From Tubulanus polymorphus (Eukaryota > Animalia > Nemertea), in assembly GCF_964204645.1 (NCBI RefSeq), contig NC_134033.1:3430131-3494130 (forward strand): a DNA stretch of 64,000 bases, in the 5' to 3' direction. A program made the position numbers and the translations under genes. Below, piece after piece: positions 27,129-64,000 of this stretch; within the stretch, counting starts at the first letter, position 1, and each line of letters begins with the position of its first letter. The notes under the pieces are model-generated. The model was not told where the DNA came from. It made no database searches and saw nothing but the letters and a program-made list of their open reading frames with translations.

Positions 27129-27760
27129 TATGTATACGTCCATATGTATTCTGTATATTGCTGCAAAAAGTTGTATCTAGTTTTGTACTCTAGTTTGATA
27201 GAAAACTGAATTTGGGCGGATCTTTATCAACGGGGATCTTTACCTTTGTGGGATTTTTACCGGAGGGATACCTGAGCTTCAGATGAATGACTGAGCTTCT
27301 TTTCAAATTCCCTGACCTTTCCCTTAAGAAGGTCCTTTCCTACGACTCCTCGATTCCTTGAAATCTCCTCCTAAACCAAAAATGTTTTCCCTTGAATTTG
27401 AGCAAAATGCTCAAAAAGTCCTTGAAAACTAGATAAGTTTAAGGTTTTAAACCTAGTTGGCAGTCAAAGGCCACAGATACCACTTAATGAATAGTTTACC
27501 AAGATTAAAATTACCAATTAAGTCGGAGTCTACAATAATTGATATGTGAAAGTGATGCATACGCTTCTCGAAATTTGAAATATTTTCTCGATGAAAACTC
27601 ATTGAAAGGTCCCTTTATTCTGGAATGACTGATCACCAGGGACCCTAATTAAAGAAGAGTCAGTATTTCTTTACTTTCCCTGCATAGAAAGATAAATTTG
27701 TATATGTCGCTAATTTAAAAGCTTTTTCTTCCATCAGTATATTTTATTTCAGTTTAAGTC

Positions 27761-38800: not shown

Positions 38801-41800
38801 CCGAGTCAAATACAGTGACTCCGGAGTCAAATACAGTGACTCTTGAGTCAAATACAATGACTCTTGAGTCGAATACAATGACTCTTGAGTCAAATACAAT
38901 GACTCTTGAATCAAATACAATGACTCCGTAGTCAAATACAATGACTCTGTAGTCAAATACAATGACTCCGGAGTCAAATACAATGACTCCGGAGTCACAT
39001 ACTATGACTCCGGAGTTGCATACTATGACTCCGGAGTCGCATACTATGACTCCGGAGTCGCATACTACGACTCGAGTTCAGTACTAACCTTGTCTTGTAT
39101 TTCGTCTAAGTCGCGTTGACCCATCGCCGGCTCCGAGACGACTTGCTGCAAGTCCTGGACGACTTTTTTCCGACCGTCGACCTGTTTTGGCAGCTGATCC
39201 TGCACGATGTACTGATTCGTTTTCGTTTCCTCTTCCAAACGCTGCAACAATCCTGGGAGAAAAAACAACACCGCGAATCAGCAGAACAGACGAATGCATA
39301 CGTATCTATCTAGTCTGGAGCCGGTATCGCTAATTGAAAATGAACTACAAACGCCAGACATTAGACATTTTATCAGCACACTTTCAAAAACTGATCGTCC
39401 ACACTTCAATTGTGTTCAGAACTTCACCTGAGACATTTATAATTGAAAATGAACTACAAACACCGGACATTAGACATTTTATCAGCAAACTTTCAAAAAC
39501 TGGTTACCCAATAGCTGAATTTATCGAGATAACTTTTTCAATTTCGCCCCCATTCCTCAGTTATGAGGTCATCTTCAAGGTCATGTCGCTGAGAAAAAAG
39601 AGTTCTTAGTGCCTAGTCCTGTCAATAAGTGGCGCGCTGGGCCCATTCGTTTCACCGCACAACTAGGCTCTCGAACTAACATCACACCCGAGTTTCATCA
39701 AGATCAAGCCACTATTAACGAAGCTAAGTAGCACGAAAGACAGACAGACCCACGACAGACGCATTGCATGAGAATAAGGGTCACACGGAAGCTGGAGATC
39801 CAATTCATTTAATACTCATTTTCACCTTTCTTCTATAAATTGCTGAGAAAACAAATTTTCCAAACTCTCAATTTTGGCAATCCCGAATTTATTTATCTTT
39901 CATTCCGTGCAAATTTTTTGTTTCCCATCGAAACCAGAAAGCGGAAATATGTAAGATCAGTTGCAATTAAGACTATTAATTAAAGCAAGGACAACGATTT
40001 CATCGCAGTTTCTCACACTTTTCAATAAATTCTATCCTCGCGACGCAAACATTCGGAAGATGTGCAATGATTTAAAAGATGTTAAAATCCGAGTACGCGT
40101 TTTTTATACCGGTAACTTTCATTCGGCACGCAGTGTAGAATGAAAGCGTTGTCTTATATCCTCGTAGTAGATTTTTGCCGCCACTGGGAAGTGAGTTTTC
40201 GGTTATGAGGGGTGTATTTAAGGTGGCGGGGGTTTTAGCCAATGGAAGGAAAAATTGTGTATTTATGGTAATTAGAAGTCTTGGGGATAGACTTATTCGG
40301 TGATGTTGTTCGTTCTAGGTCTACAGCGCAGTTCGAGCACATCAAATTTTTTAAGGAACGCATATTTTTGTGAATTAAACCTTACGCTTTCCAGAGAGAA
40401 TTGTTTGTTCAGAAGGTTTTTATCTCTGGTTAGAAGATTGTGGAAAAATTAAAAGTACAGGAAGAATGTTGTTAGTTTGTTTATGTTGTGAAGAAGGTTG
40501 TATTGGGACAAAGAATTTAGGGAAGTATGTTGTCCTCAGCCCCCAGTTTGTACACGTAATATCAAAATAAAGACCTCAGCCTGTATTTTTATTAGGATGT
40601 CAGTTGTTCTGGTTGGTGTTTTAGGTAGTTTTTCAGTAGTGTCCTGTTTTTTAATATGGAGAGGATATTGGTAGGTACATTCGTCAAACTCAAAACGTCG
40701 GTGAATTTTGTGCGTGTCAAAATGACTTCACTCTCCACTAGCAGTGTCTTCATATTGCGCGGAGATGATGATTTGAACCGGGTCATTCTGGCCCTGACCA
40801 GACTCGAATCGTAAATGCATGTATCCCCTTTTATAGTGGGCCCAGAATCTTTGTGCACAATTTGTGTTAAAGTTTAAGAAATTCTATAATCCATTTTATG
40901 TTATTGTTTGTATATTGATGTAAAAAATCTGGAAAACAAAATGCTGCAGAAAATGCTGGTATCTAATTAATATTGTTTAAAAAAATTGCGAGGAAGATTT
41001 TCTTAGCAAATCTAACATCTGAAGACTTTTGGACTCGTCATGACTACGCTACAGAATCCTGCTTTTCATCGGGAAAGGTTAAACCTCTCAGCATGTCTAC
41101 ACCGCAGTGCGGTGTATAAATCAGTACTGCGCTTTGCGGCGTATTGGTGTAATTAGCGATCAGTTTTTATCTATTAAAAGACAGCAGTACCCGTCAAAAA
41201 TTGCGAAGTACTAGTAACTAACGATACATCGCACTGCGGAGTAGTAGCACTAAAGCGTTATGCCCGTTATACACTTGCACTTGGGGGCAATTTTTCAAAA
41301 ATTCTTAAATTCGTTCGCGTATTAAATTAATTAGCCAGTGCCAAAAGGGTTACTGATCTTTTTCGCGCACGAACAACGCTTTCGCCGTTCGTCGAAACCG
41401 ATCATGCACCAAACAATAAACGAAAAAGTTCGCCGACGAATCCGCGATCGGGAACAATTCGGCGAAAAATCGCTGCACGTTTTTGGTCGTGCCCGAATGG
41501 CGCCGACGCGGCAACTCGACGAACAGCGCGACGATCTTCTGATAACTCGTGAACGAACTCGGCAATTCGAAAATCATGAAAATAACCGAAACGGCGACCG
41601 TCAAACGAACGGCTTTCATCGAATCGGCGTATTCCGATTCGGCCGATTCCGACGTCGTCGTCGTCGTCAGTTTTTTGCGGCTACGCGAAATGCGACGAAC
41701 TTTCGCGACAATGTAGACGTTCGAAACGACGATGATCGTGAACGGCAGGACTTCCTTAACGGCGTGACTTAGAAACCACGAGTTCACGGACTTCCATCGG

Positions 41801-44800
41801 TCCCAGACGTTGAACGTGTGCAGCAGACCTCGCACCGGTCGGCCGGTGCAGACGTCGTAACCGGTGACGTCGGTTTTATGAGCGAGGCCGTAAATATGCG
41901 GTAGGTAGACGCACGAAGTAAGCGTCGACGCCGCGATGTACGCGTAAAGCGCGCGGCGTTTCGTGATTTTTGCGCGCGCGAAAAACGGAAACGCGAGCGA
42001 CAACAGTTTCTCGACGCTGATCAAAACGGTCAGCCAGTTACGCGACACGTGCGTCGCGTAGCGTAGAAAATCGATCGATAAATAGATATCCGGTTGTAAG
42101 TAGATGATCTCTTCCGGGTAGTCGCGGTAACGCGGATACAGGTGGACCTTCTGCCGGAAGATGAAGTCGCCGCCCACGGCCCAGCCGATCCAGTAACGCA
42201 GCGGTTCGCGGATACCGCGACATATCAAAAAGGCGATATCCGCGTACGCGAGATATACGAGAAGTTGAATCGATACGGAAATTATCGGTTGTTTTCGCAA
42301 GACGATGATGTTGATGACGTTCAAGACGAGTCCAGTTAGGGTTATCGACGTTCCGCCGACGAGTTTTAGAACGGCCATGTACAAGCCGTCTGTGCTGTAT
42401 GAGCAATCAGGCGTAAGCGTGAAATTAAACGACGTCTGCCCGTCGTCGGTGTCATTTGTCAGCATCGTAACGAGTACGTTAATGATTTTTTGTTGAATCC
42501 GTCTGCTCGAATATGTCAACCCGTCTGCTTTTCTGCTGTTCGTAATCCGTCTGCTCGCCAATCTCAACCCGTCTGCTATGCGCGATATATTATTACCTCA
42601 GTGATGTTCGTCTGCCGTGCGCGATCCGTCTGCTTGACATTATCAACCCATCCAGGCATTGTCCGTCTGCATTCGGTTGAAGAATATTCTTATATTTCGA
42701 GAATTCGAAGGATGAAATTATGAAATTGTTCGCTAGAGTTTGACAGCGATAATTGACCAATTTTACTGGGCTGTGCATAGTGAGAAAATTGTGAAATGAT
42801 TTGCCATAAATGAGATATTGATTTTGAATGCTGCGCTTGGTAATTATGGCAGGACGAAATTGATTTTTGTAATCGATACCTCAGGCTATTTTAAGATACC
42901 GGGGTACGTAGAAGTTGTCATTTTATCAGCACACTCAGCAAAACTTATCATTCACACTTCTTCTAATGTGTTCAGTGCTTCATCAGAGACATTTTTGATT
43001 GAAAATGAACTACAAACACCAAACATTTTATCAGCACATTTTCAAAAACTGATCGTCCACACTTCACATGTGTTCAGTGCTTCACCTGAGACATTTTTAA
43101 TTGAAAATGAACTACAGACACCAGACATTAGATATTTTATCAGCACATTTTCAGAAAGTGATCGTCCACACTTCACATGTGTTCAGTGCTTCACCTGAGA
43201 CATTTTTAATTGAAAATGAACTACAAACACTAGACATTAGATATTTTATCAGCACACTTTCAAAAACTGATCGTCCACACTTCACATGTGTTCAGTGCTT
43301 CACCTGAGAGATTTTTAATTGAAAATGAACTACAAACACCAGAAATTTTATCAGCACACTTTCAAAAACTGATCATCCACACTTCACATGTGTTCAGGGC
43401 TTCACCCGAGACATTTTCAATTGAAAATGAACTACAAACACCAGACATTTTATCAGCACACTCTCAAAAACTATTCACACTTCACACTACAATAATGAAT
43501 GTTTAAAGGGGTCCAGGTTCCAGGCTGCAGACTGATACAAGCATTAACCTCTTGACACATACATTCATCTAAGAAATCTAAGATAGTTTTTTCAAGTATG
43601 AAATCAGTAATCAAAATTAAATCATTCATATTGATGTTTTATGGATAGTCGATCTATTTCATACCTTCAGGTGTCGCGCCGACCGCCGCCTGTCTCAAGT
43701 CTTTCAGCTGATTTTGTAATCTCGACAATCTTTGGTCGCTGTGCATTATCTACAAATTACAAACATCGATTTTATCATTATTCTGACCTAAGGGTTCCTA
43801 CGAATCAGTCATTCCTACAATTTTAAACGAGAAAATTTCAAATTTCATGGAACTGTCTGCACCACTTTCATATCCCAATTACTGTAGACTCTATCTTGGT
43901 AAACCATTAATTTCTAATTTAGTAACTGCCGAATTGGGTAAAAAAAAATCTTGGTCCCAACTGTACCAATTTAGGGGTAGGTTAAGGTACAACTACAAAC
44001 TAGACAAAAACTTGTAATTGCCTATATCTCAAAATTGAAGTTGGAGTTTCGGGCATTTTTCTCATTTGAAAGCCGTTTCAAGCACCTTAGTTTATATCAA
44101 AAGCATTTTACCATTTAGAAGGAGTTTCAAAAGAAATCAAAGAGATCAAAGGTTCACGTCGAAAGGTTTGTTCCGAAAATTGAGGGGTCAATCAATTGCA
44201 TCAGAGATATTCGCAGAGATGAGAACGCCGACCTGTAAAATCCGCGGGTTATTTTTCTTGAGTGACATACGCGAACCAGCTGACGGCGTAGCCGTCAGCA
44301 CTAGCGAGCGCCGAAGGCGCGAAGCTATTTCGGGGGGGGGGGGTTGGGGCCCTCCCCCGAGAAAATTTTAGAAATTAAATACGTTTTCCGAGCACTTAGA
44401 GCGATCTTGAACCCATGAACGACTATTATATTTTTGAAGGTAATGGCTAGTTCCAATGTGGTACATCCTCATTTGATGACATTCAGCATCTCATGCATTA
44501 CGGGTCGAGCCCTGAATTATTGCAGTAAAAATGCGCCGATGAATGCTCACTAAAAATCATCACCCAGTAGTGTATAATATCCGAAAGCGTTCGCCACACA
44601 CACGCAGCAACAGTAAGTAGACCTATATACGTTACTACTGTTGCTGTGCGTGCGTGTCTGCAACCGATCGATAAAATACATACAAACTCATCGTAGTACA
44701 AATGTACATACAAAATCACTGTGTTGCAATGAATATGCATTGAAATGCGATACTTTTACGTGACGATAAGTAAAACAGGCACTGAACGCTTTTACGGTTC

Positions 44801-47800: not shown

Positions 47801-48235
47801 CTTATAGACCCCTCCGAAAAGATGTCGAAATAAATCCCCAAATGACATCATCAATCAATTTTTTCAAAGGGAGGCACAGCGGCCGAGTGGTTTAAGCCGC
47901 CGGTCACTGGTCTCGTCAATCTAGGGATTACAGGTTCAAACCCTGGTTGCGACATAGTTTCTCGGACGAAGGTTCTTCTCTGGTCTCTCCCCCATTGGGA
48001 AAAGGAAACATCGAACCCTCTTATAATGCCCTGCGCGGCGCTTAGCGGGTTGAGGGTCTGGGTGTTTAAAAAAAATTGTTTTCCGCCTGACCTTGGGGTC
48101 GATTTCGCCGAGAACGTCAGTGACGATTTGTAGAACTTGAACGCTCTCCAGAGAATCGAAACTGATCAGATTGTAGTGTTTATTGAACGGCGGTTTCGCC
48201 AGTTCAGCGACAATGAATTTCATCTGTTCGCTCAT
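32808..48235 (-). CDS. IFT81: Intraflagellar transport protein 81 (IFT-B core), about 683 aa, 14 coding exons
   Basis: Exons (minus strand): 48235-48092, 47436-47339, 46648-46468, 45544-45389, 45095-44985, 43749-43665, 39252-39089, 38197-38102, 37529-37383, 36650-36501, 35829-35611, 35056-34970, 34181-34024, 33063-32808. All introns are GT-AG and phase-consistent, giving 2052 nt. Peptides match IFT81 as I recall it, for example [69 protein letters not shown] and the C-terminal DRLIL. Confidence 0.98.
34182..34860. repeat. About 160-bp degenerate tandem repeat in IFT81 intron 12, built from the splice-acceptor region plus piggyBac-like MITE sequence
   Basis: cctacgaaagggcagac..gagaaagacaaagaa..caccgcagtgcggtgtataaa recurs about 4 times. 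Confidence 0.75.
36263..36428. mobile_element. Tc1/mariner (pogo/Tigger-type) MITE with TA TSD
   Basis: ta|cagtcaacccccgatatacgg ... cggtatatcgagggttgactg|ta. Confidence 0.88.
36835..37275. repeat. 60-bp minisatellite, about 7 copies
   Basis: Unit ctcaagtcagatcttttgacttgagagtgatatctgagttggatggtacagtagactccg aligns line for line. Confidence 0.97.
37618..37904. mobile_element. piggyBac-like MITE with TTAA TSD
   Basis: ttaa|ccctttcagc ... gcacggaaaggg|ttaa. A related copy lies at about 41080-41260. Confidence 0.8.
38773..39072. repeat. 21-bp minisatellite (gactccggagtcaaatacaat), about 14 copies
   Basis: Visible periodicity; each unit carries the palindrome gactccggagtc. Confidence 0.95.
41350..42465 (-). 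CDS. Intronless class A GPCR nested in IFT81 intron 6, about 371 aa
   Basis: First ATG at 42465 (MLTNDTDDG, with NDT and NFT sequons), then [31 protein letters not shown] and [17 protein letters not shown]. Lies between IFT81 exons 43749-43665 and 39252-39089. Confidence 0.92.
   Translation of the reverse strand: MLTNDTDDGQTSFNFTLTPDCSYSTDGLYMAVLKLVGGTSITLTGLVLNVINIIVLRKQPIISVSIQLLVYLAYADIAFLICRGIREPLRYWIGWAVGGDFIFRQKVHLYPRYRDYPEEIIYLQPDIYLSIDFLRYATHVSRNWLTVLISVEKLLSLAFPFFARAKITKRRALYAYIAASTLTSCVYLPHIYGLAHKTDVTGYDVCTGRPVRGLLHTFNVWDRWKSVNSWFLSHAVKEVLPFTIIVVSNVYIVAKVRRISRSRKKLTTTTTSESAESEYADSMKAVRLTVAVSVIFMIFELPSSFTSYQKIVALFVELPRRRHSGTTKNVQRFFAELFPIADSSANFFVYCLVHDRFRRTAKALFVREKDQ
42920..43530. 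repeat. 109-bp tandem repeat array (about 5 units), same family as 32300-32720
   Basis: Unit aattgaaaatgaactacaaacaccagacattagatattttatcagcacactttcaaaaactgatcgtccacacttcacatgtgttcagtgcttcacctgagacattttt. Confidence 0.93.
44214..44950. mobile_element. Non-autonomous DNA transposon with 12-bp TIRs and an apparent 6-bp TSD
   Basis: tattcg|cagagatgagaa ... ttctcatccctg|tattcg, with subterminal ccgcgg repeats. Confidence 0.72.
45630..46245. repeat. 26-bp minisatellite with two variant units in a higher-order pattern
   Basis: Units cacagttgtgggtttgtattcagttc and cacagttgcagatctgatcctagttc; these explain the spurious ORFs at 45422-46297. Confidence 0.96.
46713..47185. repeat. About 62-bp minisatellite with a CTCF-like core in each unit
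   Basis: Unit ...ttccacttgtggcaagtgatgatCCACCAGGTGTCGCTAgtgtgcagtaggacat...; about 7 copies. Confidence 0.9.
47871..48075 (+). mobile_element. tRNA-derived SINE in IFT81 intron 1
   Basis: A box (gcggccgagtggttt), B box (ggttcaaacc), body and A-rich tail. Confidence 0.72.
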
Positions 48236-49320
48236 CCTGTCGTCTGCTGGTCGACTGGTCCGGTGTCGCTCAGCAATAGTCAAACCTAGAAAATAGAAAT
48301 AGAATATCAAATATAGCCGTAAAGCGGCAATAATGGGTTTTCTGCCTCGATGCACCATTTACATTTGAGCTAACAAATAGTAAACTTGTTAAGCAAAAGC
48401 GGCAATAACGGGTTTTCTGCCTCGCATCACATTAGATTAGAGCACCCATCACATTAGAGCTAAGAAATAGTAAACTTGTCAAGCAATAGTGATAACAGGT
48501 TTTCTGCTTTAGTTTCGCTATTCTGGAGCTTATGTAATGAGGCTCTCTGACGTTGGTTTTTTCGATACCTCGTCTGTCTCTGGGCTCCACTCCACCAACA
48601 CAAAACAAAGAAAGAACAACCCGCGGGAACAGTGTAAAAGTACATACACACATTTTCACAGTGGTTGCCAGAAGGGCCACTGCCAACAAATTAACCCCAT
48701 TCCCGCTAAACTTCGAACTACGTTTAAGCTACATGGAGAACAGAGCCGCAGAGGCTATTAAATAAACTGCCCGGCTGTATTCGAGGGGGGGGGGGGTTGC
48801 AGACAGGGCAGTTGGGAAATTTGGAGAAAGTGCCCTTTTTGCAAATATCGTTGTTATATCCAGCCCCTTCCTTTCTCTGCCCCTCCCCCAAATTCAAATG
48901 CTAGGTATGGACAGCCCTGCCATGGTGCACTGACTGGTGGTTCTGACTGCTTCGCTTGGACTGTTGTTGGAGGGGCTATTTTCTCCAACTCTGTTCAACA
49001 CTTCTTTTCCTAAATTTTTCTAGTTAGAGGCAATTTTTCTTAGTTATGCACTTCTGTGCCTGAACTAGCCAATCAGAATGAGCTATTCAATTGGAAAAAT
49101 ATTGTTAACAGCAATCCGGTAATAATCCCGCATCGGCAAAATATCACCTGCCAATAGGGCCTAACTGAAATATCTAAATAAACTATTTGATTTGATTGAT
49201 TGAAAGATTTTTTGTTTACTTTTTTGTTTGCCTTTGGGATCGAAATTTAAGTTTTCTAGCGCAATATTTTTACTCATGTACTATAGGAAATACCTTGTTT
49301 GTATTATATAGATACCTTAC

Positions 49321-50708: not shown

Positions 50709-51046
50709 CATACTCCATCTGCAGGGACTCGAACCTGATGGCATCGCTACACTCAGACACGGCACGAACCCCTGCCATAGACGACCATGTGCGCAGTTAC
50801 ATGCGCACTATCCGAACGAAAACTGGCGGCACCAATCAGATTGCTCGTTGTATAATCGTTGAGGCAAATTACAAGGAGGAACCATAAATGGGAAAACCCG
50901 GGCTAAAATAAAACGGGATTTCTGATTGGCTAAAAATCACATCATCTGAACTGCGCATGTATCTGCGCACACGGTCGATTGTGGCAGGGTTTCGTGCCGT
51001 GGCAATCTCGATGCCATCAGGTTCGAATCCCTGCCGGGGGAGGATG
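50709..51046. mobile_element. Second copy of the 26790-27128 MITE, 9-bp TSD
   Basis: tcaaatatg|catactccatctgcaggga ... ccctgccgggggaggatg|tcaaatatg. Confidence 0.92.
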
Positions 51047-51128
51047 TCAAATATGGTTAGTTTACGACCGGTTTTTTATTTCCAGCTCTTGATGAATGAA
51101 GATTGACGTCAGCGCTGTTCTGTTCTGT

Positions 51129-54100
51129 CTATATATCTATTCTCACTCTTTTATTGATTTTCTTAATTTCTGACCTGATGCAATATTTCATCGCAGTCTG
51201 GTCGCTGCCTATGTAACGGATATACAAGTCGGATAGGTGCGGACGATTTTCGATTAATTCGACGAATATATCGATATCGCCTTGCGTAACCAGGCTCTTT
51301 CCGTAAGCGAGGAACTCTAACCTACGAAGCGATGAGACGCTTTTAAGTTGTCGGACGATGGCGTTACACTGTTCCGCTCTATCAAGATAGCTTATAATAC
51401 CGACTTCTCGCAGCTCATTTACCGCGTCTGATGATAGATACCGAACAAGCGCGTCGCCATCAGCTTCTGAAAGCAAATCTATCAATAATACAGTCAACCG
51501 CGGCATTTGACCTAGAACGCGGCCTATTTGCAAATTACTAGTTGCGTGACAAGTAAGATGCTTCAGTTTCGGCATCGAGCCGACGCTATCACTGATTTCT
51601 ATCGACTGATTCGTCGTTAATTTGACCAGATCGAGCTGTATCGTTTCGATCGCCGAAGATTTTAACGCTGCGTTAAAAAGGTCCAATTCTTTCCCGGTCA
51701 AATTTTCATCGAACATCACTTTGTCCAAAATGTGAATGCTTTTCAACTTGGGAATCATATTCGTCAGCTCTCCGAGTATACTGTCGTCACTATCGGGTGA
51801 TACGTCAAATAGAGATAGATGATTTAGGAACGGATGAGATTTCTGAATATCGCCTAAAAGTTTCGCACTTAGAGTCGCATTTTCGATAAATAGAATTTCC
51901 TGTCTATGTTGTGTTGAGGTAACACGACTGATCAGCTGATCTTCATCATCGGGTGTAATCACTCGACTCATTCTTATCCATTCGCGCTCGAGTTTCTTGT
52001 AGTATATAATATCGGGGGTACCAAAAATGTCGTGTCCATCTAGGCACACAAACCAGTTCATGCTATTGCTCTTCTGACACAAAGTCAAGTACGGATTATG
52101 CTTGTCTATTGGCGATGGGATATTCGTGTCTGTCTTGGCTATCATACCCTGAAGACAAGTGTTACTCGCCATGGCTGTTGCCAATGTAGAATATTCGTCG
52201 TCGAATATTCCGCCGGGTTTCAGTTCGAAAAGAGGATCCCTTAAATAAACTACCTCGGTCGGGCATTGTTTGTGTTCGAGTATTTTTGCCAGGGTGTTAA
52301 TTTCAAACCTCATTAATGAACGTACGATCAACATTTTTCCGATATTGTGAACTATTTCCGCGATTGCGTCGTCCGGCCAGTCGGCTTCATGCAGGTAGAT
52401 CGATAACTCATAAGATAATACGTAGCTTTCGGATCGGAGTTCGATGAAGCGTTCGTAATCGGGAATGACCGACATTAGGAAACTACTTCGACGGTTAAAC
52501 ATTTCCACGTGATTTAGTTCATCGATTGTGACTGCTTTCAAATTTCTATCTATCAAAGTCTTGAAAAGTTCACCGAGGCCGCGGTTATGCTTGTAACGAT
52601 GCAGCAGCCCTGCCATGAATCTCGGGTATAATTCACCATATTGTTCAAGTTCTTCCGGCAGTTTATCAAACGAGCATTTTTTCCAGGGTGTTTCACCACT
52701 TTCGTTGAATTGTACTACTGAGTGTACCGCCGCCATAAATTCTTGCACAGATTTGTGTATGAACCGTAGCTGGACGGAGCGGTCTGATTTCTGTCGCGGC
52801 GACATCTCTTTGCACGTCAAAGCCGTCATCTTCGATTCGTCGGGTTTGAGACGATTTTCGCTGAAGCTGTTTTGACGCGCGATGAGCGTCTCGTACGCAA
52901 CTAGACAAATTTCCTTAAACGTCTCGGAATATTCGATATCGCGAAAAAAACATTCCGACGACAAGTCGATGCCATCGCGTTTACTGATCAGAAAACATGT
53001 CAAATCGATGTAGATATCGGTGAGTTTTGATGGTATCGTAATTTCGTCCTTGTCCATGTAGAGAAAACAAAACATGTATAGTATCAACGGGTTGTAGTAG
53101 ATACTTTGAAATAAAGGTGACGCTTTACTTCTAAGTAGGTCGAATAGCTCATCCGCATCGCGCTGGGGGAATTTCCTCTTCATTATATCGATGACTTCTT
53201 CCGTTTTGAAGCCGGATATCGATGCAATGGTAAATCTTGGATTGGTGACGATCATGCTGCCCCCGGACTCGCGCGTTGTTATGACGATATGCACTTTTGG
53301 TAATTCATTGGTGACGCGTATGACACGTTTCTTCGCTTCATCGTGTTTCAACTCATCGAAGCCGTCTAGAAAGAACATCGCTTTTTCTGCATTTTCCCGT
53401 ACGAATCTCTTAAAACTATCAACCGTCAGATTCTTTTTAATTTCTTGATTTATAAGATTTTCGAAAATGTACTTATAAATACACGCGTTATCAGCGGGAA
53501 GATCATTTAACGGTATATAAAACAACATAGGAAACTCCTTTAGAAACTTCGTCGGTGAGCTCGTCCAGCTTAAAACCAGATTGATTATTTGTGTAGTTTT
53601 ACCCATACCGGGCTCACCTACGAGGCACACGCGTTTCATAGCGCGCTGATCATAAGCGAAAAGCTCCTTGAAATCATCGGGTAAAATCACTGACTGTTCC
53701 TCACTTTCTTCATAGCTCAGCGGATTTCGTTTTCGGGGTCGAATTTTCACGTGTTCTCTGGTGAAGAAGTCGTGGAAATTGATGAATTTATCGCTCCACC
53801 AAACCTCTCTGTAATATTCAACATCGATCATTTGTTTGTACGTTTCTTCCAGACACTCCCGAACTTGAGTAACATCTGTAAAATGAAATGAATTTACGAC
53901 TTCAGATAAATGCTGATTTCATATTTCATTTTTCAAATTCAAAGAAAACAATCATAGGCTACATTGCAGGTTAAATCTAAAAGATGTTCCTTTTAATGTT
54001 GAAAAGAATCGGGTGGGTTCATTTTGGACTTCAGAATATTGAGAGACAAGTAATCTCAATTGCGTCAGAGACCAGTCTCATGATTTAAGATGACATTCGG

Positions 54101-54364
54101 ACTCGATTCAGATCCGTGAAACTGAGCCCAAAATTTAAATGCATGAAATCTATAATTACCTAGATTCTGAGGAGGTCTGTCGATGCCTTGCTTATCTTGG
54201 TGGCAGCACTGATTTATTCTTGTATAATTTATTGTATTAGTCGCACCGATTTGAGCTATTTCAGCATTTTCTACATTTATTCCTGGATTACTCTCCGCCA
54301 TCTTGTCACCGATTTGAACTATTTCAGAATTTTCTGCATTTATTTCCGGATTACTCTGCGCCAT
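51129..54364 (-). CDS. NLR-type protein: N-terminal tandem RHIM-like motifs, NACHT NTPase and degenerate LRR-like C-terminus (about 983 aa, 2 coding exons)
   Basis: Exon 54364-54160 (phase-1 donor gtaatt) splices to 53875-51129 (acceptor ttttacag). Walker A GEPGMGKTT, Walker B MFFLDGFDEL, VITTR, NPLIL, winged-helix FIHKSVQEFMAA, and LxxLxL repeats in the C-terminal third. Confidence 0.92.
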
Positions 54365-54403
54365 AGTAGATGTACTGAAAAACAGAATTTAGAATTCATT
54401 TCA

Positions 54404-54622
54404 TTACAAACTCTCTACCGGCCACTTCTATCAGGTTTACAGATTACAAACTCTCTACCGGCCGCTTCTATCAGGTTTACAGATTACAAACTCTCTACCG
54501 GCCCTTTCTATCGGGTTTACAGATTACAAACTCTCTACCGGCCCTTTCTATCGGGTTTACAGATTACAAACTCTCTACCGGTCGCTTCTATCAGGTTTAC
54601 AGATTACAAACTGTCTACCGGC
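54404..54622. repeat. 40-bp minisatellite, about 5.5 copies
   Basis: Unit ttacaaactctctaccggccgcttctatcaggtttacaga. Confidence 0.95.
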
Positions 54623-55342
54623 CGTCTGGTCGAAACGAACGCTAAACAATTCTAAACAACATACCTGATGATATGATAAATCTGTAAGATGAATATATAC
54701 TGCATCAAACGTGTACTTTAAGCACAGAAACTACTGCTAAATAAGTGTACCACTCAATATGTGTACTGCTCAATGAGTCACCAACTATTAAATGCGCATA
54801 TCAGTGACAAATATTTTATCATCGATAGATAAGAGTAAAAAACCAGTATGATATAATGTCCGTGTGAACCCCGTACATTGTCTGATACGACGCGGTTGAT
54901 AAATGAAAATTACCCGGCAGGCAGGTGTTTATTTTTTTATTTCTTTAAAAGAAACACATTTTTGGAAATAGTGACCAGGCATGCAACATTTTTATTTTTG
55001 ATGATATTTGGAAGCAACCCTTCTCTTTGTTTTCTTTAGACCTAAGATACCCAGCCAAATATGTGTCATAAAGACGTTTGCGGGCATTCACTGAACACCA
55101 GAACCGAGGAATCATTACTACATGTAGCACTCTCACTGAATGGAACATTGTCAGAAATATCTTTAAGTCTTCAACATGCCTTGAACATCTTGGCTGATTG
55201 ACACGAACGACCAGGGCAGACAGGGAAACTAACTACCGGAAACTACTACTAGCGACACCTGGTACACCACCACGGAATCATCTACCAGTTGGCGGTACCG
55301 GTAGCGCATTGTACTCTTCGGGATAATCAAATATATCACATC

Positions 55343-58300
55343 TCATACATAAGCTTCAGCGTCGCAGGACGCCGCCCAGTCCGGTATTTGCAGAAGATAA
55401 AACTTCAAACGATCGGGTATCGGTAAAAATTTCACTCGATCGCAATACGTGCTCGCCAGGATCACCTTACGACACAAATCCTGCAAATTCAAATCCGCGT
55501 CCAACTGCCAAACGCGTATGAACCCGTCCGTCGACGAAACCGCCAGGTACTCGTCGAATCGGCTGAACGAAACATGTATGGTAAATGGGTATTTCCCTGT
55601 CGCCAGCTGTCGAACGTAGCCGCCGTTATCCTGCGCGATACCGTCCAGGATATAAATCACTCGTAGATCATTCGCGTTTAAAATCTGAATTCGCAATCCG
55701 AGCGTGACGGCGATTACATCTCCGCTGCGACTGTATCGTAACGGACAGTTTCGGCCGTAAAATAAAAAGAAATCGTCTTCGTCGTCCGCTTCGTGTTCGT
55801 TTGTCGTCAACACCGTCGACCGAACGACCGCTTTCTCGTCGACATCGTAAACGTGGAGTTTACTGGCGTTGCCGCGCGTCGCGAACGCCAACACCGAATG
55901 CGCCGATTTCGGGTCGAAGTCGAACGCTCGCGGGTTCGAAATTCGACTGCCGAATTTTTCGAAATCATCGACGACGTTCAAAAACGGCTCGGGGCGTTTT
56001 TTATCACGACAGTCGACGAGAGATATGTCACCGTTCGACATGGCGATGGCGATGAACTGACTATCCGGCGACCACTTACACTCGCCGCCTACGTACTCGT
56101 CGCGACCGATGTCGCTGTATCGCACGCGACCGACGACTCGGAACGCGCGTGTCTCGATGACCGAGAGTTCGAATTCATCGCCGAAGCGAGCGATGAACGC
56201 GAGGTATGCGCCGTTCGGTGACACGGCGCCGCAGCAGTGCGCACTGATGTAGTAGCTGGTATCGAATTTAAGACGTTCTCGCTCATTGAACGCGCCCGTT
56301 TCAATATCCTGAACGTAGATCTTACAGCCGTCGACGAAGCAGACGTATTTGCCGTTGGGATGAGGGCGAATTCGGGGCTGCGGGAAGTATTCGGCACTAC
56401 TAGTTCCCGGATAAATGCGATACGCTGTAGAGAAAAAAATAGAACACATTTTCATCGCAATTTTCATAGGCGTTCCCAGGAATTTTCATAGGGGGCATCA
56501 ATCCAGTATCCAAGCACAATGTCGGGTGTTTGGTGGGTTTTAGAGACGTTTTTTCAGGCTCTAAATTTATCACTAAGAGGTAAAAGACAAGTTAAATTGG
56601 CAAGAAAAATCTTGTACATTGATAACAGAGTAATTTAAGAAGTAAATCTCGAAAGGGGGTAACCCCCACACCCCTCTGGGGACGCCTATGATTTTCTATC
56701 GGTTTATTGGTTTACGACGTGATAGGGTGATTTATGGAAGCAACCGTATTATTTATGATGTCTAAGGGTGATTTTTTGGCAGCAACCATAGTTTATCAGT
56801 GATGTCAATGGGTGATATTCCGGGAGTAACCGTGCTCCTAGAAGGGTTTATTCAGTAGTTTCCGGCTAGAGCGGTACCAGTCTATTCGGCAACCTGTAGT
56901 CATAATAAAAATAGTTCCGAAATCTACTGTATACGATAAGATGATGTCATAGGGGGAGTTATGGAAAAAGCCATTGGAAAGGTCTAGGCGATTACCACGG
57001 TAATTAATGATGTCATATGGGAACTCGCAGAGTCTGGGGAAGGGTAGATATCTTAATGATGTCATAGGGGGAGTTATGAAAGAAGCCATTAGAAAGGTCT
57101 ATAGGTCATTACCACGGTAATTAATGATGTCATATAGGAACTCGCAGAGGCAGCCATGGGGAAGGGTCAATATCGTGATGATGTCATAGGGGGAGTTATG
57201 GAAAAGGCCATTAGAAAAATCTAGGTCATTACCACGGTAATTAATGATGTCATAGGGGAACTCGCAGAGTCTGGGGAAGGGTCGATATCTTAATGATGTC
57301 ATAGGGGGAGTTATGGAAGAAGCCATTGGAAAGGTCTAGGTCATTACCACGGTATTTAATGATGTCATAGGGGAACTCGCAGAGTCTGGGGAAGGGTAGA
57401 TATCGTGATGATGTCATAGGGGGAGTTATGGAAAAAGCCATTAGAAAGGTCTAGGTCATTACCACGGTCATTACCACGGTAATTAATGATGTCATAGGGG
57501 AACTCGCAGAGTCTGGGGAAGGGTCGATATCGTAATGATGTCATAGGGGAGTTATGGAAGAAGCCATTGGAAAGGTCTAGGTGATTACGGTATTTAATGA
57601 TGTCATATGGGAGCTCACAGAGGCATCCATGGGAAGGGTAGATATCGTGATGATGTCATAGGGGGGGAGTTATGAGGTAGCCATATTACCTGTAGTCGAT
57701 GCGAGATGCCATTTAACGACGAATCCTTCAGGAGTCATCAGCCGCGGTGAGATTGATCGAATCGTGGAAATACCTCCGCAACCTACCAGTTCAACGTCTG
57801 AACACGGAATAAACTCGCAGTCGACGAGCCACAAAAAATTCTCCAGTGGTTCCTGAATCCCGTATTCCATGAACCAGTTTACTGGAATCAAATCATCAAT
57901 TTCAACATCGACCCATTCGTTGTGATTCAATATTGTAATTTCTATCGACGCATTTGCCAGCAGAATATCCAGAAGACAGCGGTATTGATATATAGAATGT
58001 ATGTTAGTAATACATGTAATTTACAGGCAGTACTGTTCCGTAAGACGAGTGCTCAGGACAAATGACCTGATCAATCAAAGTCCTGTGTGCTGGTCATATG
58101 GTCAGTACTGATAATAATGATAATATGTCTAGCCTTCTGGCTATTGTTTTAACACTCCTGATGACGTGGTCCTCATGGGTATAAAACCCGGAGACACACG
58201 TCGCTCTCTCTCTCTTTTCTCTGACTCGTGGTCACTTACACTCAGCTCTCACTTTGAGTACTACAATAAAATTACATTTTCCAACTATTAACCGTAGTTC

Positions 58301-58574
58301 TTACTTCTGAGCTAGGACCTCTATATCAGTATTCTTATTAAAAGATTTTATATATGAATGCGATAAGTCAGAGTCAGTAGTTACCTGGTCTCCGACCGGT
58401 TGTGCGAGGCATCGCGCTGAATGTGCTACAAATAGTTCGCGGTTCGCTGCGCAATTCGACCGGAAATGGCCGGTACTTTTTGTGCGGGATGAAAATATCC
58501 GTTTTGGATTTCTCGAACGGGAGTGCCGGAAATGTAGTGGAAGTATTGTGAAATTTCGATTTTAACACGCCCAT
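55343..58574 (-). CDS. WD40-repeat and SOCS-box protein (WSB-like Cullin5-ElonginBC substrate receptor), about 507 aa, 3 coding exons
   Basis: Exons 58574-58385, 57941-57690 (weak acceptor but tactaac branch point upstream) and 56424-55343; both introns phase 1. WD blades (CKWSPDSQFIAIA, VSFSRFDEYLAVSSTDGFIRVWQL) and a C-terminal SOCS box LQDLCRKVI...LPIPDRLKFYL. Confidence 0.88.
56465..56690. mobile_element. MITE with cataggcgt.cccag TIRs
   Basis: atttt|cataggcgttcccag ... ctggggacgcctatg|atttt. Confidence 0.75.
56938..57678. repeat. About 118-bp dimeric minisatellite (two atgatgtcatagg subunits per unit), about 6 copies
   Basis: Alternating ...ggagttatggaaaaagccatt.gaaaggtctagg.. and ...gggaactcgcagagtctggggaagggt.. 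subunits. Confidence 0.93.
58034..58328 (+). mobile_element. Probable solo LTR in intron 1 of the WSB-like gene
   Basis: TG...CA ends, internal ggtataaaacc TATA-like box, CT-rich tract and AATAAA. The flanks gtac/gtat form an imperfect 4-bp TSD. Confidence 0.55.
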
Positions 58575-58964
58575 TATTGATTTGAAAATGTTAAGACATT
58601 ATATGCCGAATTCGTTCTTGAAAAAACCCGGGACAGCAAATCGACGTCGCTCTTCTCTCGGCGATTTTCGCGCAGCATTTTTCCATTTCGCGGATCACCG
58701 AGAATTCCTCTTCTTTTAACTGTGATCTAAAACACAAACAAGAACAATTTTTTTGGAAAGTAATTCATTATTTCGACAAAAATATCTCCAGAAATAACTC
58801 CAGAAATACCTTTGTATCTACGTACATGTATTACTTATGATATGATTGACTAAGAAATCAAGCAAAATACTCATTCAGGGTTTCTACGCCAACACAGTCA
58901 ACCCCCGATATACCGCATCCCCGCCTACCGTCACGGTTTCTTAATGAACATCTCTATACAAATA

Positions 58965-59140
58965 CAGTGGAAACTCGTTACAGCGAACTTCATTAGACCA
59001 GAAATACGTTCGTTGTAACCGATAGTTCGTTATATCCAGTATGAAATTAATCGGATTTTCATTCTTGGGACGAAATTCTATATTTGTTATTATATCCGAT
59101 GAATCGTCGTGTCCGAGTCCGTTATAACGAGATGCCACTG
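58965..59140. mobile_element. pogo/Tigger-type MITE (TA TSD) nested within a copy of the 36263 MITE family (about 58895-59260)
   Basis: ta|cagtggaaactcgttac ... gttataacgagatgccactg|ta. Confidence 0.85.
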
Positions 59141-59497
59141 TACATAGTAAAACACCCCCGATATACCGCCCTCCCATTTACCGCAAAGCCCGGCTACCGC
59201 CAGGTTTTCTCAATGTACACTTCGACACATATACATAGTTAAACATCCCCGATATACCGTTTTATCCATTCATTTATTCATTTCAGAAAAACTAGCATTA
59301 ATGTGTACAATATGACAATCAATACGAAATGTTGTAATATAAAACTAGAATGTGGTTTCAGAAAAAAAGGCTTGTATGAACTGAAACCCAGATAAAGTAT
59401 GTAAAATATAAATGTTTGTACAAACTGTGGTTGGTTTAGAGAACTATTGTTTAAAAATTCAACCCTGCGAAAAATGCAGAGATTTTAGAACACACCA

Positions 59498-59607
59498 GGG
59501 CCCGGTTTTATAGACTGGTATTACCTTTAACCCGGGGGTTAAATCAATTGAAAATGAATTAAATTAGCCCCCGGGTTAAAGTTAATACTAGTCTATAAAA
59601 CCGGCCT
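59498..59607. mobile_element. Short palindromic MITE
   Basis: ccggttttatagactggtattacctttaacccggggg ... cccccgggttaaagttaatactagtctataaaaccgg. Confidence 0.7.
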
Positions 59608-61199
59608 AAGTACAATACATAAATAAATCTGTTTAAACATGATCAACGAAATGAGATAATCGATTGAAGTGGAGGGCGGGTCCATCTTTGATTTGAAAAT
59701 TTCAAACTTTACTGTTTGATGACAATGAATCGACGCATTTAAAACTCAAACAGATCAGCGAAGGTTTAGATATCTGTTCGATGTTTTGAAGCCATTGGCA
59801 AAATACCGACTTCAAATCATCTAATCTAAACAAGTTAGGATTTCTAGATTGAAAATAACCGGACACAAGAGTTAGATTCAGAGCCTGTAGGTAGGGTGAC
59901 AAGAAGTTAATAAATCCATCTATCGTTCGGCAAAGACGCGCTGGTTCAGATTTTGGGGATGCCAATTATTGGTGTGTGACACTGAGACGCACATATTTAT
60001 GATAGACTTACTTTGGAGCCTCGTTCCCTTTTAGATGTCATCATTCATTTCAAAATGTTCACTCTGCATTGATAACACATGTAGCACAGGGCTGCCAACC
60101 GTAACAAATTGAGATTTTTCAGTAAATAAACATTGAAATATAAGTATGCAAGAAAAATTAATCAGTAATCAACAGTAAGACCATCCGACAGGAACATCTT
60201 TCATATTCCTGTACGTATGAAACTTCAAAAAAAGCAGTATATCTCGTTAAAAAATAGTAACAAATACTGAAAATCAGGAACAATTTGGCAGCTCTGGTCG
60301 CAATAAAGTAAGTTGATTCAGAATTTGACTTTTATTGAAAAACACTCGGCGCAATCGCATTTCTCAACAATTTCACAAATTGGCAATGGAAAATACGGGC
60401 GAATTCAGATGAAATGATATGCAATAATGAAATGAGTAGATTTTTCGCATTGAAAAACACAAAACATTGGTTTTTAACCCGATTTTCGACGTTTGTAGCG
60501 GAATAGTTTAGGAATACGAATCATGCGTGTCGTACGGTGCTGCCACCGAGAAGAGCCGTTCTAAACAATCTGCAGAGCTGCCCTGTTAGGCGATGCGCTT
60601 CTCCGGCAGAAAGCTGCCCTGAGAGGCGAAAGGTATAAATGTCAAACTTGCTACGATTTGGACGAAACAGCGCGACGAACTACTGGAGATATGAGACGCC
60701 AGGGGAGCCTTGTCGAGTAATTAAATAACTATTCCTGTCAACTCAACAACAAATGGTGAAATATTCATTCAGGCTAAACAAAGATTATACGGTACTTCGT
60801 TTCTCCGCAGCGGTTGGGTAATTTTTGTAAAATTTAATCCGGTAATTTGTAATCAGTTACTTTCTATAGCTGCCGGGTCTGTTATGGTAGATCAAGATTC
60901 TAAAAGATGGACAGGGTAGATAGACGGCCGGCCGGGTCAAGTTTTAAGCTTAGCAGAGCCGTGAAACAATTGCAAAATTTCAGGTATCATTTTTTGGCTT
61001 ATTAACAGCCCTAACTCCAAATAGGCAAATTTTATATGATTCACTATTTAATTCCCCCTGGTGGCATGGTGGCAAGGAACATATTCAATCCCTGTACTTC
61101 ATGAGCGGGACGTATGATACTAAGATGGCCGCCAATTGCGCCTGAACCCTACCCGTCTTAGTGTTCAGTGATTCAGTGATTCAGCGAAGTTCGAACACC

Positions 61200-61680
61200 C
61201 CAATATTTCATCGCGGTCTGGTTGCTTCCTATGTAACGGATATACAGGTCGGATAGGTGCGGAATATTTTCGATTAGTTCGATGATTAATTCGACGAATA
61301 TATCGATATCGCCTTGCGTAACCATAGGCTCTTTCCGTAAGCGAGGAACAACCTACAAAGCGATGAGACGCTTTTAAGTTGTCGGAAGATGGCATTGTGT
61401 TGTTTCGCTCTATCAAGATAGCTTATAATACCGACTTCTTGCAGCTCATTTACCGCATCTGATGATAGACCGAACAAACGCGTCGCCATCAGCTTCTGAA
61501 AGCACATTTATCAATAATACAGTCAACCGCGGCATTTTGACAAAGATTATTCCTGCTTTTCAACTCAGGAATCATCTTCGTCAGCTCTCCGAGTATACTG
61601 TCGTCACTATCGGGTGATACATCAAATAGAGATAGATGGTTTAGGAACGGATGAGATTTCTGAATATCGCCTAAAATTTT
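61200..61680 (-). pseudogene. Internally deleted, frameshifted duplicate of the NLR 3' (LRR) region
   Basis: High identity to 51181-51520 and 51737-51860 (LGDIQKSHPFLNHLSLFDVSPDSDDSILGELT; EVGIISYLDRA), then jumps directly into a copy of 54905-55235. Confidence 0.92.
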
Positions 61681-62029
61681 CTCATTTTCAAAATCCATGA
61701 AAATGACCCGACAGACAGGTGTTTATTTTCATTTCTTTAAAAGAAACACATTTTTGGAAATAGTGACCAGGCATGCAACATTTTTAATTTTGATGATATT
61801 TGGTAGCAACCCTTCTTTGTTTTTTTAAAGCTCAGATACCCACCTTTTACAAATATGTGTCATAAAGATGTTTGCGGGCATTCACTGAGCACCAGAACCG
61901 AGGAATCATTACTACATGTAGCACTCTCGCTGCATGAAGCATTGTCAGAAATGTCTTTTAGTGTTCAACATGCCTTGAACATCTTGGCTGATTGACACGA
62001 AGGACCAAGGCAGATAGAGAAACTAACTG

Positions 62030-63050
62030 AATACGAATACGAATACGAATATTTATTACACCCCATAACCATTTCCATGGTATATGGAGGAAAAACAGCG
62101 TTAACAATAATTACATAAACAGTAATAAAAGCTACAAAACTTAATTAACTGGTCTCACACTTATGAACATAATATACTATTTACTATTTACAATACATAT
62201 ATTTACAATACATATACTGCTGGAGGGATTTATATACATCTAGACCTATTTTGATGAATAAAGCCAAATTTAAAGTTGGATTTTTTAATACATCTAAGTT
62301 CCGAAAGGTATTTATATCTAAGTGGTTTTCACGGGATTCGCTTTACGTCAATATACATAGGATAACGCCCTAGCTCTGTCGGCACTTGCACATTATGGGA
62401 ATATTTCGTAACTTTCATAATAATTTTACAGAATAAGCAATGGAGGTTTTCTAGTAAATCGAGATTCTCATAACCCCAGATTTCGCAGTCATATAGAGCT
62501 ACAGGAGCGACACACACCTGTCAAATAGTTTAAGTATTACATCTATCGGAAGTTTCAAACGTCTACCCTTCTGAATAATAGAAAACATGGCTCTCGTAGC
62601 TTAATCATAAAGCATTTTTTTGCTTTAGCGAAACTGCCATTCCAGTTGAATTTTACTCCAAGATACAAATAATCTTCAACTACCTCTAACTCATGGTTAC
62701 CAAACATAAATTTCGAAATTTCCTTGATCCTACTTTTACTTCTAGCGAAGACTAATATTTTAGTTTTATCAACATTCACTGAGAGGCCAATATTCAAATA
62801 ATGTATCTAAATGTAACTGGAGAGATTTTTCATCTTCTGCAAGAATAACTGTGTCGTCCGCGTACAGAATATTGAATAGATTAAGTACAGTCCCCAGTTC
62901 TGAATCACAATTCACATTCAGTCGTTCAATAGACAAAGTTGGATTACCGCGCGTGAGAAAAAACTCTTCAATATCGTTTAGAAATAGGGAAAATAGAATT
63001 GGTATTAAGTTTTCACATTGTCGTAAGCCTCTATCTGCAGCAAAGTAATG
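62030..63050 (-). mobile_element. 5'-truncated degenerate LINE (RTE-X-like RT 3' part) with a (TATTCG)n tail
   Basis: Minus strand encodes LYADDTVILAE, VNVDKTKILVF, YLYLGVKF and LYDCEIWGYENL..ELGRYPM; tail aataaatattcgtattcgtattcg. Confidence 0.88.
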
Positions 63051-63059
63051 TGATGTGTT

Positions 63060-63384
63060 ACCGCGGGTTCCCGGGTTCCGGTATCACTCCCGAACTCGCT
63101 TCCACCAGCCCCCTGGCCTCACGAAGCGTGATTTCCTTACTGGCGCTGTTGCGCGTGACGTCATATATCGATTTGCGAAATACTTCCTTGTTCGGTAAAA
63201 CGTTCGCTGATTGGTCAATTTAACGGGAAAACCAACAGAAGTCTACTGACGGTTTGTTACAAGCGCTGTGATTGGTACGACCGGAATCTGGTCGGCTAGT
63301 AACGACTCCAACGACTCGTGAGGTCAAGGGGTTCGGCGAACGGCTTTAGCGTAGAGGGTTCGGATCCCTTGACGGGTGAAGATG
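63060..63384. mobile_element. Copy of the 24592-24860 Mutator-like element
   Basis: Near-identical body, ending cccttgacgggtgaagatg. Confidence 0.8.
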
Positions 63385-64000
63385 CGTTGAATATGGGTTG
63401 GCTCGAGCCGCGGAGCCGACCAGTACGGGGAAATTTCCCCATAGCGGGCTGTCCATTGTGGGGTAGTCTCCGCGCATGTAGTTATCGCATCTTTGGATAG
63501 ATGTCGTACGAGGTGGATATTTCTAGTGAAGTAAATTATATGTACATGTATTGACCTCGATATACTTTTTATTCTAGTCGGGAGAATAAACGTTTCTTGT
63601 ATCTTATCTCTTGTCCTAGTGAACAGTTTATTCCAATTCAGGATCGGGTGAAATCTTTTACCTGTAAATTTCTTAGTAAAAGCAGTTGTGGAACGAGATA
63701 TTCGACATTCGTAACACGTAAAAACTTCGAGATGACATCGCTCGTGAGACTGGTAATGAGGGCTGCAAGTTCGGCATCCCGACTTTCTTCTTCAACAAGT
63801 TCAATTTCTTCGACGAGGCAGTTTTCAGCAAGTGTCGCTTCGCAGAAAGAATTGAACCGGCCCCCGACTGGTAATGAAGTTTATAGAGCCGGAGGTATAG
63901 CTACTATGGCTAGATTGCCGTTACAGTCAACAGCTGAAGGTAAAAGCAAATAGAATTTCAAGCTCAAAACTAGGGAAATACGTACCAGGGCGGATCTAGG

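What the first reader, a model, noticed from the sequence alone, without database searches (positions are those of the whole stretch)
51129..54364. NLR with a tandem RHIM-like (amyloid-signalling) N-terminus instead of a death-fold domain
Seen: the ORF track splits this gene, but a phase-1 GT-AG intron (54159-53876) joins the small exon 54364-54160 to the NACHT-LRR exon. That exon encodes two 21-aa repeats, MAQSNPEINAENSEIVQIGDK and MAESNPGINVENAEIAQIGAT, followed by NTINY, and I see no CARD/DD/DED/TIR domain before the NACHT. Established: RHIM cores are (I/V)Q(I/V/L)G in a context such as RIPK1 IYNSTGIQIGAYNYM and RIPK3 IYNCSGVQVGDNNYL. Fungal NLRs such as NWD2 use a short N-terminal amyloid motif to template a downstream death effector (HET-S). 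Inference: this is an animal NLR that signals by nucleating a RHIM amyloid, directly coupling an NLR sensor to a RIPK/IMD/MLKL-like partner. I cannot confirm from the sequence whether this architecture is already described in this lineage.
Basis: partly seen in the sequence, partly recalled or inferred. Interest (0 to 1): 0.9.

Follow-up and report, generated by a model that had tools for sequence, protein, structure and literature searches.

The report
Ribbon-worm NLR with doubled RHIM-like motif
A ribbon-worm immune receptor gene carries two copies of a short amyloid-type signalling motif (RHIM-like) at its front end instead of a death domain; this design was already predicted in amphioxus, and here the copy number varies from zero to ten between sister genes, but function is untested.

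Summary
Isoform X1 adds only 17 residues, with no death fold. The NACHT-HD2-LRR body resembles NLRC4/NLRP folds.

The 21-aa units come from a 63-bp duplication that includes the start codon. They follow the RHIM register, but neither is a full RHIM: each has Ala at one of the four essential aliphatic positions, and Pfam RHIM does not score them. A single-copy paralogue has the full tetrad, with RHIM as its only (sub-threshold) Pfam hit. Sister genes carry 0, 1, 2 or 10 units. The ten-unit array ends in this gene's pair, and AlphaFold models it as a beta-solenoid. Change among the young units looks neutral.

RHIM-NACHT proteins were predicted in amphioxus in 2014, so the design is not new; I found no report from spiralians. 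This scan noted the family at several other loci of this genome. No partner was found; amyloid formation and the splice junction were not directly shown. Verdict: real, new variant of a known kind, possibly attenuated.

The parts
54665..54705 (-). Coding part of the upstream exon used in RefSeq isoform X1 (ATG 54705, GT donor at 54664); with the 10 nt before the exon-1 ATG it adds 17 aa, no domain; in-frame stop 4 codons upstream of its ATG
   Evidence: a contig of run X2 ends exactly at 54665 with 77 letters continuing elsewhere
54403..54623 (.). 40-bp minisatellite (5.5 copies) in the intron between the upstream exon and exon 1; related sequence lies upstream of paralogues L002 and L003
54160..54374 (-). 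Exon 1 (acceptor AG at 54375; coding from ATG 54364 in isoform X2): two RHIM-like units plus a polar linker, 68 codons + 1 nt
54302..54364 (-). Unit 1 (aa 1-21): tetrad I8/A10/V16/I18, core VQIG, no C-terminal Asn-x-apolar strand
54224..54301 (-). Unit 2 (aa 22-42) with tail to aa 47: tetrad I29/V31/A37/I39, core AQIG, complete tail N43-x-I45
53876..54159 (-). Phase-1 GT-AG intron, 284 nt; the same acceptor context precedes the NACHT exon in paralogues L001, L004, L005 and L006
   Evidence: low intronic depth in run X2
51129..53875 (-). Exon 2: single exon encoding the pre-NACHT helices, NACHT, helical domains and LRR solenoid (914 aa + stop)
53166..53633 (-). NACHT NTPase (Walker A at 53618, Walker B at 53375, both intact)
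   Evidence: Pfam PF05729 E 1e-15
52521..52757 (-). NLRC4-type helical domain HD2
   Evidence: Pfam PF17776 E 1.5e-5, below the curated cut-off
51132..52463 (-). Divergent LRR solenoid (about 15 strand-helix units, aa ~540-983)
   Evidence: AF2 pLDDT mostly 70-90; Foldseek best hits NLRC4 and NLRPs; Pfam LRR_14 E 2e-4
61201..62028 (-). Deleted, frameshifted duplicate of the same gene: upstream flank (54903-55234) joined to two LRR fragments; lacks the RHIM-like exon and NACHT

Best explanation
The gene encodes a cytosolic NLR sensor whose only N-terminal signalling module is a RHIM-derived motif, doubled by a recent 63-bp duplication inside exon 1. Shown: gene structure, intact NACHT, LRR, no death fold, RHIM ancestry of the unit, and copy-number variation (0, 1, 2, 10) among paralogues. 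Inferred: ligand binding to the LRR lets the NACHT oligomerise; this crowds the disordered N-termini, whose units stack as in-register beta-arches (one 21-aa coil per unit); the stack seeds a RHIM adaptor (RIPK1-like or RHIM-death-domain protein), most plausibly leading to NF-kB or cell-death signalling. This is the logic of fungal NWD2/PNT1. The two imperfect, acidic units probably form a weaker, two-rung seed that needs oligomerisation or a partner to nucleate.
For: Both units fit the RHIM register; the essential tetrad sits at offsets -8, -6, 0, +2 in RIPK1/RIPK3 (bioRxiv 10.64898/2026.02.19.706818), followed by Gly and an Asn-x-apolar tail (PMC4262963). Each unit has 3 of 4 tetrad residues. 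The same paper finds the third strand dispensable for RIPK3 nucleation, so the missing tail of unit 1 is not fatal. The relaxed pattern occurs twice in the whole six-frame window, both times here (pattern chosen after seeing the data). Single-copy paralogue P0003 has the full tetrad and RHIM as sole Pfam hit (13.8 bits, E 0.043); P0050 likewise (14.1 bits, E 0.034). Unit 1 versus the P0003 unit: pN 0.12, pS 0.51, Fisher p 0.007. The ten-unit paralogous array, whose last two units match this gene's pair at 59/63 and 62/63 nt, is modelled from the single sequence as a beta-solenoid (best pLDDT 84.8, pTM 0.79). Residues 1-69 are unstructured in the full-length model. RIPK1 homologues with RHIM exist in Spiralia, and non-mammalian RIPK1 (including zebra mussel) needs the RHIM for full NF-kB activation (PMC12119088).
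Against: No Pfam RHIM score for this gene's units. No match to RIPK RHIM chains in the PDB. Profile comparison with an amphioxus RHIM-like motif aligns the cores but is not significant. A similar first-position variant (TQIG) fails to activate NF-kB when placed in RIPK3, though it still supports ZBP1-dependent death. Changes among the young units are 3 synonymous to 17 non-synonymous, as expected under neutrality. The motif is frameshifted in L003 and replaced in other paralogues. No partner was recovered. AlphaFold tends to build solenoids from near-perfect repeats (own knowledge); no shuffled control could be run.
Confidence: 0.52

Rival explanations
1. The motif is RHIM-derived but degenerate in this gene. 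The doubling is a neutral in-frame minisatellite event in a repeat-rich genome, and the protein acts as a sensor that signals through a helper NLR (as NAIP does with NLRC4) or is drifting to a pseudogene.
For: Ala at one tetrad position in each unit; no HMM score; neutral change pattern within the array, including GQIG and VLIG cores in L001; frameshifted motif in L003; a decayed gene copy at 61201-62028; many minisatellites in the window.
Against: Unit 2 has no amino-acid change against the last unit of L001; NACHT under purifying selection (pN 0.07-0.11 versus pS 0.19-0.28); open frame of 983 aa; the neutrality test has few sites and little power.
Confidence: 0.27
2. The units act as a RHIM decoy or regulator, or serve only to stabilise the receptor's own oligomer. 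Imperfect, acidic repeats would cap or compete with amyloids formed by paralogues with canonical cores, as the RHIM-like repeats of Drosophila Pirk/Rudra inhibit the IMD pathway.
For: Pirk/Rudra carries several 18-residue half-RHIM repeats and is an inhibitor (PMC4262963); residues 1-47 hold 7 acidic and 1 basic residue; canonical cores exist in paralogues P0003, P0010, P0013 and P0050.
Against: The protein keeps a full NACHT-LRR sensor with intact Walker motifs, which a pure decoy would not need; no data on any interaction.
Confidence: 0.1
3. The resemblance to RHIM is coincidental (an Asn/Gln/Ile-rich low-complexity leader), or the true effector domain lies in an unrecognised upstream exon spliced to the open acceptor at 54374.
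For: All HMM scores are below the Pfam cut-off of 20 bits; ESM Atlas found nothing; the acceptor is open in frame; paralogues take other N-termini (Ig domains) at an equivalent position.
Against: Two different paralogue motifs each return RHIM as sole hit among 24,736 families; full register conserved across subfamilies; both RefSeq isoforms lack such an exon; no death-fold frame within 9.6 kb upstream.
Confidence: 0.11

Closest known systems
Amphioxus RHIM-NACHT-repeat proteins (Branchiostoma BF82280; Kajava et al. 2014, PMC4262963)
   Same: Animal NACHT protein with a RHIM where a death fold usually sits; prediction only. I also found a RHIM-like motif before the NACHT in Branchiostoma XP_078670847.1 (HEPN - RHIM-like - NACHT - LRR).
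   Different: Here the host is a spiralian; the units are head-to-tail with no linker, arise by intra-exonic duplication including the ATG, and are imperfect. The NACHT is only distantly related to the amphioxus ones (E 1e-18 to 1e-40), so orthology is not shown.
Fungal NWD2/HET-S and PNT1/HELLP, bacterial BASS3 NLRs
   Same: NLR with a short N-terminal amyloid-type motif and no folded effector domain; PP and BASS3 share the RHIM core.
   Different: LRR rather than WD40/TPR sensor. No effector gene is adjacent: neighbours are a WD40-SOCS-box gene and an IFT81 exon. The doubled motif is on the receptor here, whereas it is on the effector in HET-S.
Mammalian RHIM proteins RIPK1, RIPK3, ZBP1, TRIF; Drosophila PGRP-LC/LE, Imd, Pirk
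   Same: Register of the motif; several RHIMs in one sensor (ZBP1); short half-RHIM repeats (Pirk).
   Different: None is an NLR; ZBP1's RHIMs are separated by long linkers; this gene's second core is AQIG and neither unit reaches the Pfam cut-off.
NLRC4 / NAIP / NLRP-type NLRs
   Same: NACHT-HD2-LRR fold; best Foldseek hits.
   Different: No CARD, PYD or BIR; 12-15% identity; a lineage-specific expanded family with NACHT and LRR in one exon.

Membership tests
NLR (NACHT-LRR) | NACHT NTPase with intact Walker A and B | tested here: met
NLR (NACHT-LRR) | C-terminal LRR solenoid | tested here: met
   AF2 model and Foldseek; Pfam LRR_14 weak
NLR (NACHT-LRR) | N-terminal death-fold, BIR or TIR effector domain | tested here: not met
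RHIM (PF12721) | Core tetrad (V/I)Q(V/I/L/C)G | tested here: inconclusive
   Unit 1 VQIG meets it, unit 2 AQIG does not
RHIM (PF12721) | Aliphatic tetrad at offsets -8, -6, 0, +2 | tested here: inconclusive
   3 of 4 in each unit, Ala at the fourth; 4 of 4 in paralogue P0003 and in two L001 units
RHIM (PF12721) | C-terminal Asn-x-apolar strand | tested here: inconclusive
   Present in unit 2, absent in unit 1
RHIM (PF12721) | Pfam HMM score at or above 20 bits | tested here: not met
   No hit for this gene; paralogues 13.8 and 14.1 bits as sole hits
RHIM (PF12721) | Motif in a disordered region | tested here: met
   pLDDT about 25, no secondary structure, aa 1-69; the neighbouring NACHT is also low-confidence, so this is weak
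RHIM (PF12721) | Forms amyloid and binds other RHIMs | not testable with these tools
   Only a structure model of the paralogous ten-unit array
NWD2-type amyloid-signalling NLR | Matching motif on a downstream effector, usually the adjacent gene | tested here: inconclusive
   No such gene in the window (pattern found only in exon 1); database searches returned only paralogues but were limited by length and word filters; whole proteome not searchable

The most novel reading that the evidence does not exclude
A spiralian NLR family signals through RHIM amyloid and tunes its nucleation threshold by expanding, contracting and exchanging a start-codon-containing 63-bp unit (0, 1, 2 or 10 copies). 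Tandem units fold into an intramolecular beta-solenoid seed, and an ATG at the head of each unit could let one mRNA yield proteins with different unit numbers.
Probability: 0.25. Interest if true: 0.78.

Novelty: new variant of a known kind. Interest (0 to 1): 0.5.

Why it matters
NLR-to-effector amyloid signalling is established in fungi and bacteria, but in animals a RHIM-bearing NLR has only been predicted (amphioxus). An expanded family in a nemertean would extend the design to protostomes. Its natural series of 0, 1, 2 and 10 units with canonical and Ala-substituted cores gives a ready-made test of how RHIM number and quality set an amyloid nucleation threshold. This particular gene is an intermediate, imperfect member; the single-copy and ten-copy paralogues are better test objects.

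Tried and rejected
Pfam on exon 1 and on short windows of it: no RHIM; a weak SH3_KALRN hit (E 0.2) was rejected as noise. PDB sequence searches with the motif and two motif profiles: nothing, or chance FKBP hits. ESM Atlas feature searches: nothing usable. Partner searches by motif: only paralogues. Upstream death-fold exon: none in frames of 70 aa or more up to the window end; shorter or more distant exons are not excluded. An artefactual splice was rejected because the RefSeq model is identical and paralogues share the acceptor. Foldseek on the array model gave no significant hit; VIA-align gave only generic beta-helices, with no HET-s or RIPK amyloid among the listed rows. Literature search for 'RHIM-NACHT' or AQIG with RHIM gave nothing; the supplements of PMC12119088 held as text name no nemertean. 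A formal clade test for recombination was not run. ArchCandy was not available.

Full report
Identity and gene structure. The long ORF at 51129-53831 matches, at 100%, RefSeq proteins of LOC141911268 from the ribbon worm Tubulanus polymorphus. Isoform X1 uses it, adding 17 residues from an exon that ends at 54665; that frame is closed by a stop four codons before its ATG. No death-fold or TIR family scores on exon 1, on X1 residues 1-160, or on any minus-strand frame of 70 aa or more from 54370 to 64000. Searches on the window were done exon by exon; I built no joined model, and whole-protein steps used the RefSeq protein by its id.

Expression evidence is indirect. No run holding this DNA is on record as RNA. 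Run X2 nevertheless behaves like RNA: depth in the intron bin is 1.4 against 32-122 for contigs on the exons, one contig stops at the donor 54665, and one (about 89% alike, so a paralogue) stops at the acceptor 53875. The 54160/53875 joint was not among the rows displayed, so it is not directly confirmed.

The receptor body. Exon 2 has NACHT (E 1e-15) and an HD2-like region, with intact Walker A and B. AlphaFold gives a confident strand-helix solenoid from about residue 540 and leaves residues 1-69 unstructured; the NACHT part is low-confidence. Foldseek's best matches are NLRC4 and NLRPs. It is an NLR without a folded effector domain.

The N-terminal units. They are a 63-bp duplication starting at the ATG (53/63 nt identical). 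Deep mutagenesis of RIPK1 and RIPK3 identifies an essential aliphatic tetrad at offsets -8, -6, 0 and +2 from the core (10.64898/2026.02.19.706818), and Kajava et al. describe an Asn-x-apolar tail (PMC4262963). Unit 1 has I8/A10/V16/I18 and no tail; unit 2 has I29/V31/A37/I39 and the tail N43-x-I45. Each is therefore one residue short of the tetrad. A relaxed register pattern occurs only at these two places among 128,000 six-frame positions, and at least once in 0.017% of shuffles of exon 1, but I chose the pattern after seeing the sequence. Pfam RHIM does not score either unit, and PDB sequence searches did not retrieve RIPK RHIMs. The family evidence is better. The single-unit paralogue P0003 has the full tetrad and RHIM as its only Pfam hit (13.8 bits, E 0.043), as does P0050 (14.1 bits, E 0.034). 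Unit 1 against the P0003 unit shows pN 0.12 and pS 0.51 (p 0.007). I conclude that the unit descends from a RHIM, and that this gene's copies are imperfect.

The family. About 15 loci in this genome share the NACHT-LRR exon at 59-69% identity; the best hits from other species are far more distant. The N-termini differ: one unit (L002), a frameshifted unit (L003), two (this gene), ten (L001, LOC141910914, whose RefSeq model starts only at unit 4), separate mini-exons (L005, L006), or Ig domains (P0006, P0009, P0048). This gene and L001 are sisters in all three regional trees, with modest support. Exon 1, the intron and the first 400 nt of exon 2 are 95-99% identical between them, while silent-site difference is 0.19 in the NACHT half and 0.47 in the LRR half. 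This gradient suggests partial gene conversion or recombination; the direction is unknown, and misalignment may inflate the LRR figure. The last two L001 units correspond to this gene's pair. Among these young units, changes are 3 synonymous to 17 non-synonymous, compatible with neutrality (p 0.78; few sites), and several hit the core.

Structure of the array. AlphaFold, given only the ten-unit L001 sequence, builds a beta-solenoid with one 21-residue coil per unit and strands on the two RHIM strands (best pLDDT 84.8, pTM 0.79; other models 60-70). It resembles generic parallel beta-helices (Z about 16). This fits in-register stacking, but AlphaFold often builds solenoids from near-perfect repeats (own knowledge) and no control could be run. 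It concerns the paralogue, not this two-unit protein.

Mechanism. Most likely, ligand binding to the LRR drives NACHT oligomerisation, which crowds the units into a cross-beta seed that recruits a RHIM adaptor. Sensor anatomy and motif ancestry are shown; oligomerisation, amyloid and partner are inferred. A partner class exists in the clade: RIPK1 homologues with RHIM occur in several spiralians, and the RHIM is needed for full NF-kB activation by non-mammalian RIPK1, including zebra mussel (PMC12119088). The same paper shows that a TQIG core loses NF-kB activity but keeps death signalling, so AQIG may be weakened. Two unchecked first-reader notes describe RHIM-plus-death-domain adaptors elsewhere in this genome; I could not test them, and my own partner searches returned only paralogues. 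The main rival is a degenerate motif doubled by a neutral minisatellite event.

Comparison with what is known. Kajava et al. 2014 reported many RHIM proteins in amphioxus, with the RHIM at positions usually taken by death folds, an NWD2-like RHIM-NACHT-repeat protein (BF82280), and two or three RHIMs in several invertebrate proteins. Among the 147 new hits of my own wide search, one amphioxus cluster carries a RHIM-like motif directly before the NACHT. The design is thus known from prediction. I found no paper on it in spiralians within the searchable library. What is not covered there is the linker-less array with variable copy number. This scan has already noted the same family at several other loci of this genome, and those notes are not independent support.

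Verdict. Real feature, RHIM-derived, new variant of a known kind; function untested and this copy possibly attenuated. Interest 0.5.

Noticed in passing
window 55343-56467 (-): Single-ORF WD40 plus SOCS-box gene (WSB-like) directly upstream on the same strand. Overlapping X2 contigs run from its 3' end (55378) to the NLR donor at 54665, across three AATAAA/ATTAAA signals, so a long 5' exon or read-through is possible; contigs cannot prove one transcript.
   Followed up: partly
window 61201-62028 (-): Decayed duplicate of the NLR: upstream flank joined to two LRR fragments at 89-94% identity, with exon 1 and NACHT deleted.
   Followed up: partly
L001:5812-6441 (LOC141910914): Ten head-to-tail units, each starting with ATG; the RefSeq model starts at unit 4 although the frame is open from unit 1. 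AlphaFold models the array as a beta-solenoid. A better experimental target than this gene.
   Followed up: yes
L003:5931-6020 (LOC141910915): Paralogue whose RHIM-like unit (core VRIG) is out of frame with its first ATG; RefSeq starts downstream of it.
   Followed up: partly
proteins P0006, P0009, P0048 (LOC141906709, LOC141906642, LOC141906641): The same NACHT-LRR exon fused behind Ig domains and, in P0006 at least, a hydrophobic transmembrane-like stretch: candidate membrane-anchored NLRs, or gene-model fusions.
   Followed up: no
proteins P0049, P0050 (LOC141913982, LOC141907592): Short models (335 and 297 aa) with RHIM-like motifs and only part of the NACHT; truncated genes or annotation fragments.
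   Followed up: no
proteins P0061, P0195, P0196 (Branchiostoma): HEPN_DZIP3 - RHIM-like - NACHT - LRR architecture; P0066, P0085 and P0111 have looser RHIM-like stretches before the NACHT.
   Followed up: partly
window 50709-51047 and 26790-27129: 340-bp element with terminal inverted repeats just behind the NLR stop codon; very high depth in all runs, a likely MITE.
   Followed up: no
window 16749-17741, 22797-23747, 41350-42567; 18784-21677, 62772-63083; 28848-29279; 47936-48358: Three single-ORF GPCR genes, reverse-transcriptase remnants, a PAN-domain exon and an IFT81 exon; many minisatellites. Ordinary content.
   Followed up: no
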